Below are positions 4,098 to 21,444 of a stretch of 64,000 bases of DNA, one piece after another (position 1 is the first letter of the stretch; each line of letters opens with the position of its first letter). Both the position numbers and the translations under genes were made by a program. The stretch comes from Pocillopora damicornis. Lineage: Eukaryota. The stretch spans positions 310,001 through 374,000 of the forward strand of contig NW_020846461.1 of NCBI RefSeq assembly GCF_003704095.1, written 5' to 3'. The notes under the pieces were generated by a model. The model was not told where the DNA came from. It saw only the letters and a list, made by a program, of their open reading frames with translations, and made no database searches.

Positions 4098-5960
4098 AAG
4101 ACCCCTCTCATGAACAGCTCCACATTCTCTGCCTCCGGTGGGCAAGAGATGTCAAACTGCTGCACGATTCTGACCATTAGCAGATGAAGCTCTAACTCGG
4201 CAATACGTCCACCGAGGAACATACGTGTTCCGAATCCAAATGGAAGAGAAGCGAAAGCTTCTGCCAATTCGATCAAAGTGGTATCTCCGGTTTGAACGCT
4301 TCGGCATCTTAAAAAATACTCTCATCTCGCCCCATTTGGTGAACAAGGAACTAAACTTGAACAGTGCCCCCAGGGATATAGAAGCCCCCCTACTATTATG
4401 TCTTCTTTCGGTCTTTGCGGGATAGCGGATAGAACAGGATATAGGCGGAGGGTCTCTTGTAACCAGGCCTTCAGGTATGGCATACGAGCGAGCGTTTCTG
4501 GCGTTGCAAAGGTAGAATTTCCAACCACAGAGAGCACTGTATGTATTGACATCTCCCATATATATAAATTAATTTTGTGGTGTATTGTTCAAGATCATCG
4601 GACATTACTGAAAGTTCGTTTAATTTCTCCTCCATGGAAACATGTTGTGCCTTGCAAGTTTCTACCGGATCTCCGACTCTCTGCTGTAGAGAGGCATAGT
4701 TTTTCTCCATCGCTTTTATCCTGTTCTTTAGGTCTTCGTTTTCCTTCACTATAGAGTCGACTGTGGTTTGTGTGAACTCGAGACTAGCTCGTAGCTCTTC
4801 ATAATTTCTTTTCAGGACTGTCTACTGTTCGAGCATTAGGCTGTTATTTGTTTCAATTCTCTTAAGCGCTTCACAAATCGTCGCCAATGTTAAATCCTGT
4901 GCTCGTTTTTCGTTAGGTTGACTGCCACGTGGAGTGGCCTAAAATGCCGCTGAGTTTTCTTCGTTAAGTCGCTTTGCGTTTGGTGAATTTGTAGATTCTT
5001 CGCCACTGGCACTACTAAGATCACTCCTCTTACGTATTGTTTTCTCTCAGGGAGCCACAGAGCTCAAAAAAGTGCGTCCGCCATGTGCAACCATGCACTT
5101 GTCCCAGTCCTGTTTCCTTTGATGGCTTGCACGACTTCTCCTCCAGTTCCTTGATTCTTCTCCCGATAAATAGCTTGGCGTAATCGTACATCGTGTCAAA
5201 ATTATCGAAAAACTTTTTAAATTTCTGGGTCTCGTAGATCTTGTAAAACCAAGTAAGCAAAAAAACCGACCTCGACCGCATGCGCCAGAAAATCTCCGAG
5301 GGCTTTTATGAATGTCTGTGCCTCTTCGTTGATTTCCTCCACAAGACAACTAAACCTTGTCAAACAATATCTCCGCCACAGACTCAAACGACCATTTGAA
5401 AAGTTCATTATCGAGTTCACTAACTTCGTTTTCTTTGTCTGACCCACCAGGCTCTCGAACTAATCGTAATCGGTCAATAAAATCGCTGATAATTTTACTG
5501 AAACCCTGAGTGTAGCTGGCGACTTCTTTCGGTCGAAGCATTCAGGACGCTTCGTAGCTTACATCATTCTTCACCATTGACAAAGAAAACGCCAGGAATT
5601 TCATTCCTTATTTCCCGGTAGAAATTTAGAGATGGAAAGTCCATTCTCTCAGGATATTTGGGATCCGATCGAAGTAACTTTGCAACGTCGGCAGGATCGG
5701 ATAAACTAATAATTTCTACGCCTGGTAGTTTGTTGCGGAATACTTTCCCATATTTCTTGACATTTTCTGCTTGGATTTTGCTTTCCAAGGGGCTGACCTT
5801 TCGTTTCCACGAAAAAAATCCAAGCTGTTCCGAAAACTAGAAGACGGAGCGGACCTAGGATTTCTGAAAAATGTTTTGTTTTTGGTGCATCCTCGACTGA
5901 AATAGACGAAAGAGAACACATTGGTATCGATGGCAGAAAACCACGGAGACCATGGTGTAT
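4098..5960 (-). pseudogene. Intronless mitochondrial-clan cytochrome P450 pseudogene (copy A), interrupted by a LINE fragment
   Basis: Motifs KHFSEILGP, DPADVAKLLR, LRPKEV, FKWSFES, YLKAWLQETLRLYP and PFGFGTRMFLGGRIAELE (heme Cys changed to Phe) are spread over several frames. Confidence 0.92.
4539..5109 (-). mobile_element. Decayed 5' part of a LINE ORF1 (coiled coil ending in DDLEQY motif) inserted in P450 copy A
   Basis: P450 homology stops at 5110 and resumes at 4538. The insert translates with stops to ..KRLNEEN..YEELRASLEFTQ..KENEDLKNRIKAME..DDLEQYTTK, resembling the coiled coil plus LEQYxR start of L1/CR1/L2-type ORF1. Confidence 0.7.
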
Positions 5961-10086: not shown

Positions 10087-10897
10087 CCGAATCCAAATGG
10101 AAGAGAAGCGAAAGCTTCTGCTGATTCGATAAGAGCGGTACCTTTGTTTTGCAATCATCTCTCTGGTTTAAACAGCATCTTCAAAAATACTCTCATCTCG
10201 CCCTATCTGGTGAACAAGGAATTCCACTTGAGCAGTGACCCCAGGGATATGGTAGCCCCCTAATATTATGTCTTCTTTCGGTTTTCGCGGGATAGAGGAG
10301 AGAACAGGATATAGGCGGAGGGTCTCACGTAACCAGGCCTTCAGGTAGTTGTGTTAACTCCGGCAAACAGAACATCGCTTACGTTGGCCAACCAGTCATC
10401 TTTTGTCAGCTTTCCGCCGGCCAGGAGGAACTTGAAGAAGCCAGCTCGGTCACGCTCTGTTTCCTTCGATGGCTTGCATGACTTCTCAAGTTCCTTGACT
10501 CTTCTCCCGATAAATAGTGCGGCTTAATCTTACATCGTGTCAAAATTTTCGCAAAACTTTATAAATTTCTGGTTCACGTAGATCTTGTAAAACCAAGAAG
10601 GAAAAAACTGAGCTCGACCGCATTCGCCAGAAAATCTCCGACGGCTTTAATGAAGGTCTGTGCCTCTTTGTTGATTTCCTCTTCAAGACAACCAAACCTT
10701 TTGTCAAACAACATCTCCGCCACAGACCCAAACGACCATTAGCAAAGTTCATCATCGAGTTCAAAAACTTTGTTTTCTCTCTCTGACCCACCAGGCTCTC
10801 GAACTGATCGTAATCGGTGACTAAAATTGCCGATGATTTTATTGAAATCCGGAGTATAGTCGGTGACTTCTTTCAGTCGAAGCATTCTTTTGCTCAG
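10087..10897 (-). pseudogene. P450 fragment (copy C2) with stops and an internal deletion
   Basis: Homologous to copies A, D and E. Premature stops near 10525-10533. The region from the I-helix to just before the K-helix is deleted at ~10345. Confidence 0.9.
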
Positions 10898-12380: not shown

Positions 12381-12933
12381 TGGGCCTTTATTGTTACCAG
12401 TAAAAATCCCTGAAGAAGTCTACGACAGTTAAACGAAACACGTTGGAGAGTAAAACAAGTCTCAGAATAACCGTTCGCAGAGCGCTGCTCGCTGTTTGAA
12501 CGTTAAAAAAAATAGTCTTGTCCGTGAAAGAAAAAAAACTACAGTAACGCACACACACAAGAAGAAAATAAAACATCTCTAACGATCGCAAAGACACAAG
12601 CTGCGAACTTTTTTATCAAAAGCACAAACCAAATTTAGGGCCCAAAGAATTGATAAAAACTGCAAACCGCTACAATCGCAGGATCCGCCAATCCGTTAAT
12701 ATTTCGCTCTGAATACGAAATGCAAAATGCGGGAAAACACATTGTCTAAAACTCTAGCTCTCCCCATCCTTCTCTGTAAACCTCAAAGAGCACTGAGCAC
12801 TCGCTTGCCAAAATTACGCTTGCTCTACAGGCTACCATTCCTAGAGTGACTTTTATAATGAAAGCTACTTAGCAATATTTTCATTTGTGGCAAAGTTATT
12901 TCGATCGAACATCAACTATCCAGAGAGAGTGTG

Positions 12934-13958
12934 CTTTCCGTCTCTAAATTTCTACCGGGAAAAAAGGAAGAAAATTGCTGGCGCATTTTTCGCCGATGGG
13001 GAAGAATGGTAGAAGCTACGAAGCGTCCTGAGCAAAAGAATGCTTCGACTGAAGAAGTCGCCGACTATACTCCGGATTTCAATAAAATTATCGGCAATTT
13101 TAGTCACCGATTACGACCAGTTCGAGAGCCTGGTGGGTCAGAGAGAGAAAACAAAGTTTTTGAAATCGATAATGAACTTTCCAAATGGTCGTTTGGGTCT
13201 GTGGCGGAGATGTTGTTTGACAAAAGGTTTGGATGTCTTGAAGAGGAAATCAACAAAGAGGCACAGACCTTCATTAAAGCCGTCGGAGATTTTCTGGCGA
13301 ATGCGGTCGAGGTCGGTTTTTTGCCTTCTTGGTTTGACAAGATCTACGTGAACCAGAAACGTATAAAGTTTTTCGAAAATTTTGACACAATGTACGATTA
13401 GGCCGAACTATTCATCGGGAGTAAAGTCAAGGAACTTGAGAAGTCATGCAAGCCATCGAAGGAAACAGAGCGTGACCGAGCTGGCTTCTTCAAGTTCCTC
13501 CTGGCCGGCGGAAAGCTGACGAAGGATGACTTGTCGGCCAACGCAAGCGATGTTCTGTTTGCCGGAGTTAACACAACTACCTGAAGGCCTGGTTACGTAA
13601 GACCCTCCGCCTATATCCTGTTCTCTCCTCTATCCCGCGAAAACCGAAAGAAGACGTAATATTAGGGGGCTACCATATCCCTGGGGTCACTGCTCAAGTG
13701 GAATTCCTTGCTCACCAAATAGGGCGAGATGAGAGTATTTTTGAAGATGCCGAAGCGTTTAAACCAGAGAGATGATTGCAAAACACGTATGTGCCTCGGT
13801 CGACGTATTGCCGAGTAAGAGCTCCATCTGCTGATGGCCAGAATCGTGCAGCAGTTTGACATCTCTCACACACCGGAGGCAGAGAATGTGGAGCCGTTCA
13901 TGAGAGGGTCACCATTCATAACAGACCTGTTAGAGTGCAGTTTGTTGACAGAAAATGA
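12934..13958 (+). pseudogene. P450 pseudogene (copy D)
   Basis: TAG at 13399-13401. Same internal deletion as C2 (GTTAACACAACTACCTGAAGG). An extra deletion removes the PFGFG part of the heme loop. Confidence 0.92.
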
Positions 13959-17150: not shown

Positions 17151-17347
17151 AGAAACTAGCCAAGGCTCCTACAACACCTCCGGAGACTCCCCCTGAAAGC
17201 CCGACGCTTACCTACACCACAGATCCAGCAGATACCACTGCAGTGCATTGTTCGGACACTTTTCTGCCGGTTGTTATCTACGTACTCTTGTGTTGCGTTT
17301 GTTTTTTATGTCGGTGCTGTGCGTTTTTCCTTAAAAGAAGGCGCTAA
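17151..17347 (+). CDS. C-terminal fragment of a probable single-pass membrane protein
   Basis: Pro/Thr-rich stalk (APTTPPETPPESPT), hydrophobic Cys-rich segment (FLPVVIYVLLCCVCFLCRCCAFFL), basic tail KRRR-stop. 5' part is in the gap. Confidence 0.45.
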
Positions 17348-17612
17348 CTTTGAAGATAACTAAAGATAGGAGCGTAAAATATTTGTAAAATATTTCGCAC
17401 GACTCTGCCTTTACTTTTTAAAAGTCTGCTATCACTGTGTTTGTCTGCTTACAATAACCGTTGGCAGAGTACTGCACCCTAGTTTGTTTGTTATGGAATC
17501 CAAGTTGATAAAAGCGCGAAGATAACATGTCCCGCTGGTAACATGTCACCATCCTGCACTATCCTCCGAAAGAAAACGGGGAAGGGGCCCCCGCCCGATT
17601 TTCTTTTCGATT

Positions 17613-18851
17613 ATTAGTTTATCCGATCCTGCCGACGTTGCAAAGTTACTCCGATCGGATCCCAAACACCCAGAAAGACTGGACTTTCCGTCTCTAAATT
17701 TCTACCGGGAGAAAAGGAAGAAAATTCCTAGTGGTTTTTTTTGCCGATGGCGAAGAATGGTACAAGCTACGGAGCGTCCTGAGCAGAAGAATGCTTCGAC
17801 CGAGAGAAGTCGCCGACTTTACTCCGGGTTTCAATAGAATTATCGGCGATTTTATTCACTGATTACGATCAGTTCGAGAGCCTAGTGGGTCAGAGAAAGA
17901 AAACGAAGTTTGTGAACTCGATAATGGACTTTCCAAGTGGTCGCTTAAGTCTGTGGCGGAGGTGTTGTTTGACGAAAGGTTTGGCTGTGTTGAAGAGGAA
18001 ATCAACAAAGGGGCACAGACCTTCATAAGAGTCGTCGGAGATTTTCTGGCGAATGCGGCCGAGGTCGGTGTAGTGACACTGTGATGATTTAATCTTTAAT
18101 TACTGGGCTTCCTGTGTATTTTAGTGCCCACGCACATGTCAGCGGAGTTGTTAATCCGCAAATGATAGCGGACTTGTTTTTGTTAGGCCACCATGTTTAT
18201 GTTGTTCAGTATGTAAGCACGAGGTCTTATTGAATAAAGCCTAAATTGTGCAAGGATTAAACTTCTCTTTCATTACAGTCGGTTTTTTGCCTACTTAGTT
18301 TTACAAGATCTAGGAGACCCAGAAATTTAAAGAGTTTTTTCCAGAATTTTGATACGATGTACGATTCTGCCGAATTATTTATCGGGAGAAGAATCATGGA
18401 ACTGGAGGAGAAGTCATGCAGGCCATCAAAGGAAACAGACCGTGACTTAGCTGGCTTCTTCGAGTTCCTCCGCTCCTGCGGAAAGCTGACGAAGGATGAC
18501 CTGTTGGCGAGCGTTATGGATGTTCTGTTTGCCGGAGTTGACACTACGTCCAACACGATGCAATGGGTTCTTTATATGTTGGCCAAAAATCCTGAGAAAC
18601 AGAAGTTCTTTGATAGGAAGTGCTCTCAGTGGTTGGAAATTCTACCTTTGCAACGCTGGAAACGCTCACTCGTATACCGTACCTAAAGGCCTGGTTACGA
18701 GAGACCCTCCGCCTATATCCTGTTCTCTCCGCTATCCCGCGAAGACCGAAAGACGACATAATATTAGGGGGCTACCATATCCCTGGGGGCACTGCTCAAG
18801 TTGAGTTCCTTGTTCAGCTTATAGGGAAAGATGAAAGTATTTTTGAATATG
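17613..18851 (+). pseudogene. P450 pseudogene (copy E)
   Basis: Retains DVLFAGVDTTSNTMQW and YLKAWLRETLRLYP. Has TGA (~17860) and TAG (~18296) stops, a solo-LTR insertion and 3' truncation at ~18851. Confidence 0.92.
18069..18277 (+). mobile_element. 209-nt solo LTR with 5-nt TSD
   Basis: TGTAGTG...CATTACA termini, AATAAA at 18233, GTCGG duplicated at 18064-18068 and 18278-18282. Other P450 copies show the empty site GAGGTCGGTTTTTTGCC. Confidence 0.9.
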
Positions 18852-18875
18852 TATAGCAAAATCTCCTAGCATCAG

Positions 18876-18917
18876 CACTGCACTGATGAGGCCCAGAAGG
18901 CCGAAACAGTACTGTCT
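18876..18917 (+). ncRNA. Type I hammerhead ribozyme (retrozyme/Penelope-type), truncated by the gap
   Basis: CUGAUGA (18883-89), stem II GGCC/CAGAA/GGCC (18890-902), GAAA (18903-06), palindromic stem III ACAG-UA-CUGU (18906-15), cleavage triplet GUC (18914-16). The first stem I base pair (A18882-U18917) is visible before the Ns. Confidence 0.85.
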
Positions 18918-19017
18918 NNNNNNNNNNNNNNNNNNNNNNNNNNNNNNNNNNNNNNNNNNNNNNNNNNNNNNNNNNNNNNNNNNNNNNNNNNNNNNNNNNN
19001 NNNNNNNNNNNNNNNNN

Positions 19018-19349
19018 TGGTGCTTAGTTGTTGTCACAGTGCTCGTGGACAGATTCGAACTGAGGGAGTTATTGGAATTGCCCGAGCGTTCTTAGGAGCC
19101 GGAGCTCGTTCAGTGTTAGCGGCACGATGGGCCCTGAATGACACAGCCACAGAGCAGTTCATGATTTGCTTCTACAAATATTTGTTCCGCGGTGAAAGCG
19201 CCAGTGAATCTCTCCACAAGGCCAGGAAGTGGATGAGAAATAACGGCTTTGACAAAGTTTCTCAATGGGCGCCATTCATGATCATGGGCGACAACGTGAC
19301 ATTTGATTTTGGAAATTGGCCGGTGCCTGACGCACCTCAAGAGCCATGA
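19018..19349 (+). CDS. TPR-CHAT C-terminal fragment (copy 3); upstream part in gap
   Basis: VLSCCHSARGQIRTEGVIGIARAFLGAGARSVLAARWAL...WAPFMIMG in an open frame with the catalytic Cys intact. Confidence 0.88.
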
Positions 19350-20458: not shown

Positions 20459-20590
20459 GGAGGTCTATGTATTGATTTGTCTGTTTTACAGTGCTCGATA
20501 CATAGAAGTAGGGCGTTATATATGTTGCCATAGGGAAAAAAAACAGAGAGACTATACTTTCATCCCTACAAGCCCTATTTCATTCCTATT

Positions 20591-21232
20591 TTTGGCCAAC
20601 ATATAAAGAACCCATTGCATCGTGTTGGACGTAGTGTCAACTCCGGCGAACAGAACATCGATTACGCTCGCCAACAGGTCATCCTTCATGAACTTTCCGC
20701 TGGCCAGGAGGAACTCGAAGAAGCCGGCTCGGTCGCGCTCTGTTTCCTCTGATGGCTTGCATGAATTCTCCGCCAGTTCGTTGATTCTTCTCTCGATAAA
20801 TAATTCGGCGTAATAATACATCGTGTCAAAATTATCGACAAAATTTTTAAATTTCTGGGTCACGTAGGTCTTGTAAAACCAAGTAGGCAAAAAACCGACT
20901 TCGACCGCGTTCGCCAGAAAATCTCCGACGGCTTTTATGAAGGTCTGTGCCTCTCTGTTGATTTCCTCTTCAAGACAACCAAACCTTTTGTCAAACAACA
21001 TCTCCGCCACAGACTCAAACGACCATTTGAAAAGTTCATTATCAAGTTCACAAACTTCGTTTTCTTTCTCTGACCCACTAGGTTCTCGAACTGATCGTCA
21101 TCGGTGAATAAAATCGCTCATAATTTTATTGAAATCCGGAGTATAGTCGGCGACTTCTTTCGGTCGAAGCATTCTTTTGCTCAGGACGCTTCGTAGCTTG
21201 TACCATTCTTCACCATCGGCAAAAAAAACACT
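20591..21232 (-). pseudogene. P450 internal fragment (copy F), truncated at both ends
   Basis: Open stretch FDKRFGCL...DVLFAGVDTTSNTMQWVLYMLAKN. Homology ends abruptly at both ends within one contig. Confidence 0.9.
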
Positions 21233-21444
21233 AAGTCTAAGACAATCAGAACAAACACGTTGGAGAATAGAACAAGGTTTTCAACGACTGCACTACAACT
21301 CTGTGACAGCAGAATAAACAGTTCCACATGAAAGGGCTTCTCCGTAGCTTTCGTTTGAGTGATCAAACAGAAAGGTGACAGACAAACACAGTGACAGCAG
21401 AAAAAGTAAAGGTAGAGTCGCGCGAAATAATTTACAAACTAGAC

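What the first reader, a model, noticed from the sequence alone, without database searches (positions are those of the whole stretch)
18852..18917. Intact-core type I hammerhead ribozyme inserted into a P450 copy, at a contig break
Seen: P450 homology stops at ~18851. The next 66 nt contain every hammerhead core nucleotide in order: CUGAUGA, 4-bp stem II GGCC-CAGAA-GGCC, GAAA, a minimal palindromic stem III (ACAGUACUGU) and GUC at the cleavage site. U18917 pairs with A18882, predicting UGCAG.. as the stem I 3' arm inside the gap. Established: type I hammerheads with short palindromic stem III are typical of Penelope-like elements and of non-LTR retrozymes, which occur as tandem 150-400-nt repeats, can cleave as dimers and give circular RNAs; these are reported in cnidarians. 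Inference: the gap hides a tandem retrozyme array or Penelope end. Self-cleaving retro-RNA in an array of intronless genes also raises the speculative possibility of retro-mobilised cargo.
Basis: partly seen in the sequence, partly recalled or inferred. Interest (0 to 1): 0.8.

Follow-up and report, generated by a model that had tools for sequence, protein, structure and literature searches.

The report
Truncated coral retrozyme hammerhead copy
The hammerhead ribozyme is real, but it is a short broken-off end of an already published family of small self-cleaving mobile RNAs of stony corals, landed in a dead P450 gene copy, so it is ordinary.

Summary
Window 18877-18917 carries, in order, the stem I 5' arm, CUGAUGA, stem-loop II (GGCC-CAGAA-GGCC), GAAA, the ACAGUACUGU stem III and the GUC cleavage site. 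A 100-N gap starts one base later. P450 similarity ends at 18851.

It is one of about 50 dispersed copies of a 244-nt non-coding repeat in this 234-Mb genome. The repeat is the stony-coral non-LTR retrozyme of Cervera & de la Peña (2020). Their Acropora millepora clone shares exact 22- and 32-base stretches with it, self-cleaves as a monomer and forms circular RNA.

The window copy keeps only the last 54 nt (18864-18917), is 100% identical to about 20 other copies, and sits in a frameshifted P450 pseudogene after 12 nt of filler.

- **Complete copies:** they continue TGCAGTTA(GTTA)(TA)n, which gives a 6-bp stem I. They lie in (TA)n microsatellites and are 5'-truncated at many points.
- **Multi-unit insertions:** only a few copies exceed one unit, so a tandem array in the gap is possible but not the norm here.
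- **Cargo:** nothing supports retro-mobilised cargo.
- **Possible partner:** a Penelope-like element (PLE) with the same (TA)n target and a similar tail. At one locus it is fused to the retrozyme end.

The gap was neither filled nor looked up. Other first readers in this scan flagged hammerheads elsewhere in this genome.

The parts
17530..18851 (+). Decayed cytochrome P450 copy (pseudogene). It has several frame changes and in-frame stops and is cut off before the PERW and heme-binding region.
   Evidence: Pfam p450 hits for 18357-18686 (profile 223-297) and 18644-18850 (profile 314-378). Frame-by-frame translation. Paralog similarity ends at 18851. The start coordinate is approximate.
18070..18278 (+). 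209-nt GT...AG segment inside this P450 copy (intron-like). It is absent from four paralogs in the same window.
   Evidence: It is not part of the ribozyme element.
18852..18863 (+). 12-nt filler (tatagcaaaatc) between the P450 sequence and the repeat. It matches neither.
18864..18917 (+). 5'-truncated 3' end (54 nt) of the 244-nt coral non-LTR retrozyme unit.
   Evidence: 100% identical to about 20 other loci and 94-98% to about 20 more. It corresponds to reference positions 201-254 of L005:1301-1566, that is positions 192-244 of the 244-nt unit plus one base past the cleavage site. The exact 22-mer of the published A. millepora clone is present.
18877..18882 (+). Stem I 5' arm, ACUGCA.
   Evidence: It pairs with UGCAGU in complete family copies.
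18883..18889 (+). Catalytic core CUGAUGA.
18890..18902 (+). Stem-loop II, GGCC-CAGAA-GGCC.
18903..18906 (+). Core GAAA. A18906 is also the first base of stem III.
18906..18915 (+). Stem III palindrome ACAGUACUGU.
   Evidence: Folding.
18914..18916 (+). Cleavage triplet GUC. The predicted cut lies between C18916 and U18917.
   Evidence: This is the same site as in the A. millepora clone, where the supplement marks the cut by a space.
18918..19017 (.). 100-N scaffold gap. It was left untouched.
   Evidence: It is one of eight 100-N gaps in the window.
19020..19349 (+). C-terminal fragment of a CHAT-domain protein on the next contig. It is unrelated to the element.
   Evidence: Pfam CHAT, E 5e-25.

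Best explanation
Window 18864-18917 is the last 54 nt of one 5'-truncated insertion of the stony-coral non-LTR retrozyme. This is a 244-nt non-coding retroelement whose RNA carries a type I hammerhead.

The family is thought to work as follows. Longer transcripts are cut by the hammerhead after GUC, the monomers are ligated into circles by a host RNA ligase, and a reverse transcriptase supplied by another element copies the RNA at a nicked target.

In this genome the target is a (TA)n microsatellite. Copying starts at a fixed point 8-12 nt downstream of the cleavage site and often stops early, which gives 5'-truncated copies. The window copy landed in, or was joined to, a dead P450 copy. The contig stops inside the repeat because repeats and (TA)n tracts break short-read assemblies.

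Shown here: family membership, anatomy, copy number, truncation series and (TA)n flanks. Taken from the literature on the A. millepora orthologue: self-cleavage and circular RNA. Inferred: the copying mechanism and the Penelope-like partner.
For: - **Motif and family.** The motif is as described. The 54 nt recur at 40 or more places. A 23-mer across the cleavage site occurs 50 times with at most 1 mismatch, against 0 for the control.
- **Stem I in complete copies.** They continue GTC|TGCAGTTA(GTTA)(TA)n, giving the 6-bp stem I ACUGCA/UGCAGU. They align end to end to Rfam Hammerhead_1.
- **Unit and truncation.** The unit is 244 nt cleavage site to cleavage site, 45% GC, with no ORF. The 33 distinct copies measure 53-253 nt up to GUC, and almost all have (TA)n on both sides.
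- **Multi-unit copies.** A few copies exceed one unit.
- **Published family.** The A. millepora clone Amil224 in the supplement of PMC7229834 shares an exact 32-mer across the cleavage site and unit head. It also shares an exact 22-mer covering the stem I arm and core. By eye it aligns over the whole unit. That paper reports monomeric self-cleavage, circular RNA, 225- and 245-bp variants and similar elements in other stony corals.
- **RNA.** Contigs from poly(A) RNA-seq runs of four studies contain the element.
Against: - The 3' arm of stem I of this particular copy is hidden by the gap, so its completeness is not shown.
- Rfam scores stay below gathering thresholds.
- The window copy lacks the (TA)n tract that flanks the 5' side of almost all other copies. 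It has 12 nt of filler instead, so its insertion was atypical (a target deletion or another rearrangement) or the contig is chimeric.
- No back-joined (circular) RNA form was seen here. The RNA evidence is contigs from poly(A) libraries, which cannot show ends or small circles.
- Large tandem arrays, typical of A. millepora, are not seen in this assembly. They may be collapsed.
Confidence: 0.88

Rival explanations
1. The gap hides a tandem retrozyme array, with the window fragment as the truncated first unit of a multimer.
For: A. millepora has arrays of up to 62 units. Some copies here exceed one unit: C796 about 1.7 units, C1759 about 1.5 units, and L005 one unit plus 9 nt. Short-read assemblies collapse arrays. 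A second scaffold gap abuts the same ribozyme on C3883.
Against: Of 33 distinct copies aligned, only two exceed one unit, and then by only a few bases. Outside that set, adds one tandem locus (C1759) and one rearranged composite (L060). The other copies end in an 8-12-nt tail plus (TA)n.
Confidence: 0.15
2. The fragment is the end (pseudo-LTR) of an autonomous Penelope-like element, not of a retrozyme.
For: At C1396 the same 113-nt ribozyme end is fused directly to the 3' UTR of a Penelope-like element with RT and GIY-YIG domains.
Against: That fusion is unique. The other ends of the same element (C925, C3662, C3284, and an older diverged 5'-truncated copy on C1985) finish with TGCAAATTA(TA)n and have their own different minimal hammerhead. 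In the window the upstream DNA is P450, with no RT or GIY-YIG ORF.
Confidence: 0.04
3. The P450 fragment and the ribozyme end form a chimeric retrocopy. The reverse transcriptase copied 54 nt of retrozyme RNA and then switched to a P450 mRNA. This is the 'cargo' idea in its most concrete form.
For: The two are in the same orientation. The junction has filler and no (TA)n, like the Penelope-retrozyme fusion at C1396. Four other P450 copies in the window lack a 209-nt GT..AG segment, so processed P450 copies may exist.
Against: This P450 copy keeps the intron-like segment, so it is not a processed copy. It carries several frameshifts and stops and is 83-91% identical to paralogs that continue past the junction. 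The 54-nt piece shows no change from the family sequence, so it is probably younger. No (TA)n flanks the P450 5' side. None of the other 32 copies carries foreign sequence except the Penelope fusion.
Confidence: 0.04
4. The P450-to-repeat junction is an assembly artefact, that is a chimeric short contig.
For: Window positions 6-19 kb are a patchwork of short contigs joined by 100-N gaps among duplicated P450 and CHAT fragments.
Against: The junction lies 54-66 nt inside the contig and has unique filler found nowhere else. Assemblers rarely invent that. I could not lay DNA reads on it because the read tool's single call went to the RNA test.
Confidence: 0.05

Closest known systems
Stony-coral non-LTR retrozyme (Acropora millepora Rtz Amil224 and its ~245-nt variant; Cervera & de la Peña, Nucleic Acids Res 2020, PMC7229834)
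   Same: The unit size matches (244 nt here, 225 and 245 bp there). The same type I hammerhead has an identical stem I arm, core, stem III, GUC site and unit head, with an exact 22-mer and 32-mer shared. GC is under 50% and there is no ORF. The paper states that similar elements occur in other stony corals.
   Different: Loop II reads CAGAA here and AGAAA there. In this assembly the copies are about 50, mostly solitary and 5'-truncated in (TA)n. A. millepora has about 1500 motifs in tandem arrays of up to 62 units. Cleavage and circles have not been tested in this species.
Amphibian and newt satellite hammerheads (axolotl retrozymes)
   Same: They are type I hammerheads with a weak, short stem III. 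A palindromic stem III allows a dimeric form, and cofolding of two copies gives a 10-bp intermolecular stem III.
   Different: Those ribozymes need the dimer for good activity. The coral orthologue cleaves well as a monomer. There is no sequence similarity outside the core.
Minimal hammerheads of Penelope-like elements (Cervera & de la Peña 2014; Lünse et al. 2017)
   Same: They belong to the same genomic ecosystem. This genome has Penelope-like elements with minimal hammerheads in their 3' UTRs, for example CUGAGGA...GAAACGCGUC.
   Different: Those motifs sit beside RT/GIY-YIG ORFs and, per the literature, lack a proper helix III and loop-loop contacts. The window motif belongs to a non-coding 244-nt unit and is classed as 'canonical' in A. 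millepora.
(TA)n-targeting Penelope-like elements (Neptune and Naiad; Arkhipova 2006; Craig et al. 2021, PMC8557442)
   Same: They show insertion bias for (TA)n, frequent 5' truncation, partial tandems and short tails. These are the same features as the retrozyme copies here.
   Different: Those are autonomous elements of 3-4 kb. The element here is non-coding and would only borrow such machinery.

Membership tests
Hammerhead ribozyme, type I (Rfam RF00163) | Conserved core CUGANGA ... GAAA ... NUH, in this order | tested here: met
   CUGAUGA 18883-18889, GAAA 18903-18906, GUC 18914-18916.
Hammerhead ribozyme, type I (Rfam RF00163) | Helix II closed by a loop, and helix III closed by a loop with an A15.1-U16.1 pair | tested here: met
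   Helix II is GGCC/GGCC with loop CAGAA. Helix III is ACA/UGU with loop GUAC, or 10 bp in a dimer.
Hammerhead ribozyme, type I (Rfam RF00163) | Open helix I formed by the 5' and 3' ends | tested here: inconclusive
   The 5' arm is present at 18877-18882. In this copy the 3' arm lies in the N gap, which was not looked up. At least 45 other family copies have UGCAGU, giving 6 bp.
Hammerhead ribozyme, type I (Rfam RF00163) | Score at or above Rfam's gathering threshold | tested here: not met
   Window copy: nothing at gathering and 22.4 bits to Hammerhead_3. Complete copy L002: 26.0 bits against 34 for Hammerhead_1, full-length alignment, E 7.7e-5. Short-stem-III animal hammerheads commonly score low. 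The threshold is a curation device, not a biochemical criterion.
Hammerhead ribozyme, type I (Rfam RF00163) | Self-cleavage after H17 | not testable with these tools
   Shown in vitro for the A. millepora orthologue with the same core, stems I and III and site (PMC7229834).
Metazoan non-LTR retrozyme | Non-coding unit of about 170-400 nt with low GC that contains one type I hammerhead | tested here: met
   Unit of 244 nt, 45% GC, no ORF.
Metazoan non-LTR retrozyme | Sequence homology to a described retrozyme | tested here: met
   Exact 32-mer and 22-mer of the published Amil224 clone. The whole-unit alignment was judged by eye only, because I did not type the published sequence into a tool.
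Metazoan non-LTR retrozyme | Tandem head-to-tail repeats | tested here: inconclusive
   Only a few loci exceed one unit (C796, C1759, L005, L003). Most copies are solitary or 5'-truncated. Arrays may be collapsed in this short-read assembly.
Metazoan non-LTR retrozyme | Expression as linear and circular RNA of unit length | tested here: inconclusive
   The element is present in RNA-seq contigs of four studies. These are poly(A) libraries held as contigs only. No back-joint was seen, and many contigs run into flanking (TA)n and unique DNA.
Autonomous Penelope-like element (as the identity of the window copy) | Adjacent RT and GIY-YIG ORF | tested here: not met
   Upstream of the fragment lies P450 pseudogene DNA. 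None of the listed GIY-YIG matches lies on the window's contig.

The most novel reading that the evidence does not exclude
The dispersed copies in this genome may record how a metazoan retrozyme is mobilised, and by which element.

- **Template.** Every copy runs 8-12 nt past the hammerhead cleavage site (TGCAGTTA[GTTA]) before the (TA)n target. The template was therefore an uncleaved or religated (circular or multimeric) RNA, not the cleaved monomer. Priming plausibly used the AUAUA that follows UGCAGUUAG in the unit head.
- **Partner.** One low-copy Penelope-like family has RT, a C-x4-C-xx-C motif and a GIY-YIG domain with CCHH. It inserts in the same (TA)n targets and ends in a similar tail (TGCAAATTA against TGCAGTTA).
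- **Fusion.** At C1396 its 3' UTR is fused, without any (TA)n, to the last 113 nt of the retrozyme. This is what a template switch within one reverse-transcription event would leave.

That would name the autonomous partner of a retrozyme from genomic evidence. The retrozyme would be an unrelated hitch-hiker rather than a derivative of that element's own terminal repeat.
Probability: 0.4. Interest if true: 0.5.

Novelty: already known. Interest (0 to 1): 0.25.

Why it matters
For the finding as given, very little. It is one more dead, truncated copy of a published coral retrozyme, in a pseudogene at an assembly break. Its main use is as an annotation, and as a warning that hammerhead motifs at contig ends in coral genomes belong to this repeat.

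The family-level pattern seen on the way is of modest interest to people working on retrozymes and Penelope-like elements. That pattern is the fixed 3' end beyond the cleavage site, (TA)n targeting, the 5'-truncation series and one fusion to a Penelope-like element. The retrozyme papers read here call Penelope-like elements the likely mobilisers, on co-occurrence and terminal similarity. This genome offers a small, tractable set of insertions and a named candidate partner to test.

Tried and rejected
- **Rfam at gathering score** over the whole window found nothing.
- **Rfam RF00163 over the whole genome** was uninformative: only 73 of 31,546 candidates were scored, with genome-size E-values.
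- **MFE folding** of the 61-nt motif does not return the hammerhead fold and is not better than shuffles (z -0.74). This is expected for a ribozyme held together by non-canonical core contacts. The constrained monomer fold is -11.1 kcal/mol against an MFE of -14.7.
- **RNA contigs** of four runs show presence but no circular junction and no ends at the cleavage site. This counts neither for nor against circles.
- **A 37-mer across a full unit junction** from the published clone had no exact match in the fetched loci. The 32-mer did.
- **Derivation from the Penelope-like element.** Blastn of the unit against the C925 element copy found only short matches, none significant.
- **An intact P450 reference ORF** was not found in the paralog loci, so P450 was mapped by Pfam and frame-wise translation instead.
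- **Chance origin of the motif** is rejected.
- **Cargo or chimeric retrocopy** is judged unlikely (see the rival explanations).
- **The N gap.** I did not lay reads over it, search for its content or infer its letters. Statements about what follows GUC refer to other, paralogous copies at their own loci.

Full report
**1. What is in the window**

| Feature | Sequence | Coordinates (+ strand) |
|---|---|---|
| Stem I 5' arm | ACUGCA | 18877-18882 |
| Core | CUGAUGA | 18883-18889 |
| Stem-loop II | GGCC-CAGAA-GGCC | 18890-18902 |
| Core | GAAA | 18903-18906 |
| Stem III palindrome | ACAGUACUGU | 18906-18915 |
| Cleavage base C17 | C | 18916 |
| First base after the cut | U | 18917 |
| Scaffold gap | 100 N | 18918-19017 |

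A generic hammerhead pattern matches once in the window, against 0.02 expected from shuffles. The same kind of pattern gives 56 matches genome-wide, against 2 for the reversed control. The motif is therefore not a chance hit.

Rfam reports nothing at gathering score. In E-value mode the gap-truncated copy reaches 22.4 bits against Hammerhead_3.

The window between about 6 and 19 kb is a patchwork of short contigs joined by 100-N gaps. The contig that carries the motif is only 17151-18917.

**2. The P450 context**

- Pfam finds p450 in 18357-18686 and 18644-18850.
- Frame-wise translation shows several frame changes and in-frame stops from about 17530 to 18851. This copy is a pseudogene.
- DNA similarity to seven paralogous matches stops at 18847-18851. 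The paralogs continue in frame with ..AEAFKPERW.. and no intron.
- The P450 sequence is therefore interrupted at 18851/18852.
- Twelve bases (18852-18863) match nothing else in the genome. Repeat homology starts at 18864.
- The next contig begins with the C-terminal end of a CHAT-domain protein.

**3. The repeat family**

The last 54 nt before the gap recur at 40 or more places in the window's own 234-Mb assembly, at 94-100% identity. A 23-mer across the cleavage site occurs 50 times with at most one mismatch, against 0 for the control.

These are other, paralogous copies at their own loci. I used them to describe the family, not to fill the gap. What follows U18917 in this copy is left unknown.

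In complete copies the ribozyme continues GTC|TGCAGTTA(GTTA) and then a (TA)n microsatellite. Such a copy (L002:1514-1559) aligns end to end to Rfam Hammerhead_1 with every pair standard. It scores 26 bits, below the gathering score of 34.

The unit has these properties:
- It is 244 nt from cleavage site to cleavage site (L005:1310-1553), 45% GC, with no ORF.
- Thirty-three distinct copies form a 5'-truncation series, from 253 nt down to 53 nt before GUC. There is a cluster of starts near unit position 100.
- Nearly all copies have (TA)n on both sides.
- The window copy is the shortest. Together with the Penelope fusion described in section 6 and a few others, it lacks (TA)n at its 5' side.
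- Only a few loci exceed one unit: C796 about 1.7 units, C1759 about 1.5 units, and L005 and L003 one unit plus a few bases.
- A second scaffold gap abuts the same ribozyme on C3883. Contig breaks in this repeat therefore recur.

**4. It is a published family**

The supplement of Cervera & de la Peña (Nucleic Acids Res 2020, PMC7229834) prints the cloned Acropora millepora retrozyme 'Amil224'.
- Its stem I arm and core, as an exact 22-mer, are present in the window and in over 30 fetched loci.
- Its stem III, cleavage site and unit head, as an exact 32-mer, are present in L005 and in the C1759 tandem.
- By eye the two units align throughout. Loop II differs (AGAAA there, CAGAA here), and there is a roughly 20-nt indel.
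- That indel corresponds to the paper's 225- and 245-bp variants.

The paper reports the following:
- This ribozyme is classed as a canonical type I hammerhead with loop-loop contacts.
- It self-cleaves efficiently from a monomeric construct, with kobs about 0.8 per min.
- The RNA accumulates as linear and circular molecules of unit size.
- Similar elements occur in other stony corals.

The window motif is thus one more copy of a known element.

The genome is coded, so I cannot name the species. One RNA run holding the element is labelled 'coral metagenome'. The assembly size and scaffold count recall, from memory only, a published Pocillopora assembly.

**5. RNA evidence here**

Six RNA runs from four studies hold the unit. 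I laid the contigs of four of those runs on L005:1301-1566. They cover the unit, often running into (TA)n and unique flanks. None shows a back-joint.

These are poly(A) libraries kept as contigs. They cannot show ends or small circles. The result is neutral.

**6. How it probably moves**

*Shown by the sequences:*
- Every copy ends at the same place, 8-12 nt beyond the cleavage site, and then meets (TA)n.
- Truncation is always at the 5' end.
- Some copies are longer than one unit.

*Inference:* reverse transcription starts at a fixed site on an RNA that still spans the cleavage site, that is an uncleaved multimer or a religated circle. It is primed at a nick in (TA)n. The unit head reads UGCAGUUAGAUAUAG, which offers AUAUA for pairing.

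*From the literature:*
- (TA)n insertion bias, 5' truncation, partial tandems and short tails are hallmarks of Penelope-like elements of the Naiad clade (Craig et al. 2021, PMC8557442).
- A similar insertion bias was hypothesised for Neptune elements, mediated by their CX2-5CxxC linker.
- Penelope-like elements are the proposed mobilisers of animal retrozymes.
- Li et al. (2026, bioRxiv 10.64898/2026.07.22.740005) argue the same.

*A candidate partner in this genome:*
- The best GIY-YIG match in the genome lies about 360 nt upstream of a retrozyme end on C1396.
- The assembled copies are broken by stops or frame changes.
- Its other ends (C925, C3662, C3284, and an older diverged 5'-truncated copy on C1985) finish ...CCATTG TGCAAATTA(TA)n.
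- They carry their own minimal hammerhead, CUGAGGA..GAAACGCGUC, about 55 nt upstream.

At C1396 the 3' UTR is instead joined at CCATTG| directly to the last 113 nt of the retrozyme, with no (TA)n between. This junction is unique in the genome. A template switch during one reverse-transcription event explains it simply. An insertion into the element's own (TA)n tail, with loss of the tail, cannot be excluded.

Apart from the tail (TGCAAATTA against TGCAGTTA), the retrozyme unit shows only short, non-significant matches to this element. Other (TA)n-targeting elements, such as Naiads, remain possible partners.

**7.

- **Family assignment and stem I prediction.** Both are right.
- **Array in the gap.** This is possible but is the minority state in this assembly. 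I give it about 15%.
- **Dimer-only cleavage.** The palindromic stem III does allow a dimer. The orthologue does not need one.
- **Cargo.** No copy carries foreign sequence except the Penelope fusion.
- **Age of the P450 fragment.** The P450 fragment keeps a 209-nt GT..AG segment and is much more decayed than the 54-nt piece, which shows no change.

**8. Verdict**

The feature is real and correctly recognised. Its kind is already known and this copy is dead. Interest is low for the finding itself. The family-level insertion pattern and the candidate partner have some value for retrozyme biology.

Other first readers in this scan noted hammerhead-bearing repeats elsewhere in this genome. I saw other minimal hammerhead families in passing but did not check those notes.

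Noticed in passing
L048 (G000:C1396:18864-22699, minus strand), junction at G000:C1396:20409-20428: The 3' UTR of a Penelope-like element (RT + GIY-YIG) is fused at CCATTG| to the last 113 nt of the retrozyme, with no (TA)n between. The junction is unique in the genome. In this copy the element's own hammerhead has GAAAC changed to AAAAC.
   Followed up: partly
L049 (C925), L050 (C3662), L051 (C3284), L052 (C1985): This is a low-copy Penelope-like family ending ...CCATTG TGCAAATTA(TA)n. It has a minimal hammerhead (CUGAGGA-aggcaaaugcc-GAAACGCGUC) about 55 nt before the end and inserts in TA-rich microsatellites. The C925 copy has one long frame broken by three in-frame stops.
   Followed up: partly
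window 18070-18278: A 209-nt GT...AG segment with a polypyrimidine tract sits inside this P450 copy, flanked by TCGGT on both sides. It is absent from four P450 paralogs in the same window. It is present beside the 97%-identical paralog on C1781 and at four other places. So P450 copies differ in intron presence, and some may be processed copies.
   Followed up: partly
window 4305-5713, 10176-10897, 12887-13749, 20588-21233: P450 fragments repeat in both orientations, interleaved with CHAT-domain fragments and eight 100-N gaps. Several share the same disabling changes, for example a stop in ..ERW.. at about 10176 and about 13749. This looks like a duplicated array of pseudogene pieces.
   Followed up: partly
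L063 1579-1701 (G000:C3883:1832579-1832701): A second 100-N scaffold gap directly abuts the same retrozyme hammerhead. Here the contig starts inside loop II. Assembly breaks in this repeat therefore recur.
   Followed up: no
L050 (minus strand) about 2385-2560; also L018 downstream flank: A diverged retrozyme subfamily has a different internal region and a core reading CUGGUGA, a change at a conserved core position. It lies inverted next to the C3662 Penelope-like copy.
   Followed up: no
L004 (minus strand) 1231-1320; L038/L042, L040, L044 downstream of GIY-YIG ORFs: Other minimal hammerhead families occur here. One is an inverted pair (..cugaugagugcuuaggcgcaaaacucagagu.. and its complement). 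Others are motifs such as CCUGAUGA-ugccguagaacggc-GAAAgcuc in the 3' UTRs of other Penelope-like families that do not end in (TA)n.
   Followed up: no
L005:1551 (RNA runs X18 and X19): RNA contigs from two different studies share an alternative continuation (AAAGCTTCTCGGCC...) starting two bases before the cleavage site. This may be a rearranged, transcribed copy or a different junction.
   Followed up: no
reference positions 98-116 of L005:1301-1566 (unit positions about 89-107; for example L008, L009, L013, L018, L028, L030, L054): Thirteen of 33 copies start within 20 nt of each other, at ..TATGCATGCTCAC.. This suggests a preferred stop or joining point for reverse transcription, or a shorter subfamily.
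   Followed up: no
L022 1509-1566: Both partners of one stem I pair are changed (C-G to U.U) in the same copy. The two changes fall on paired positions but are not compensatory.
   Followed up: no
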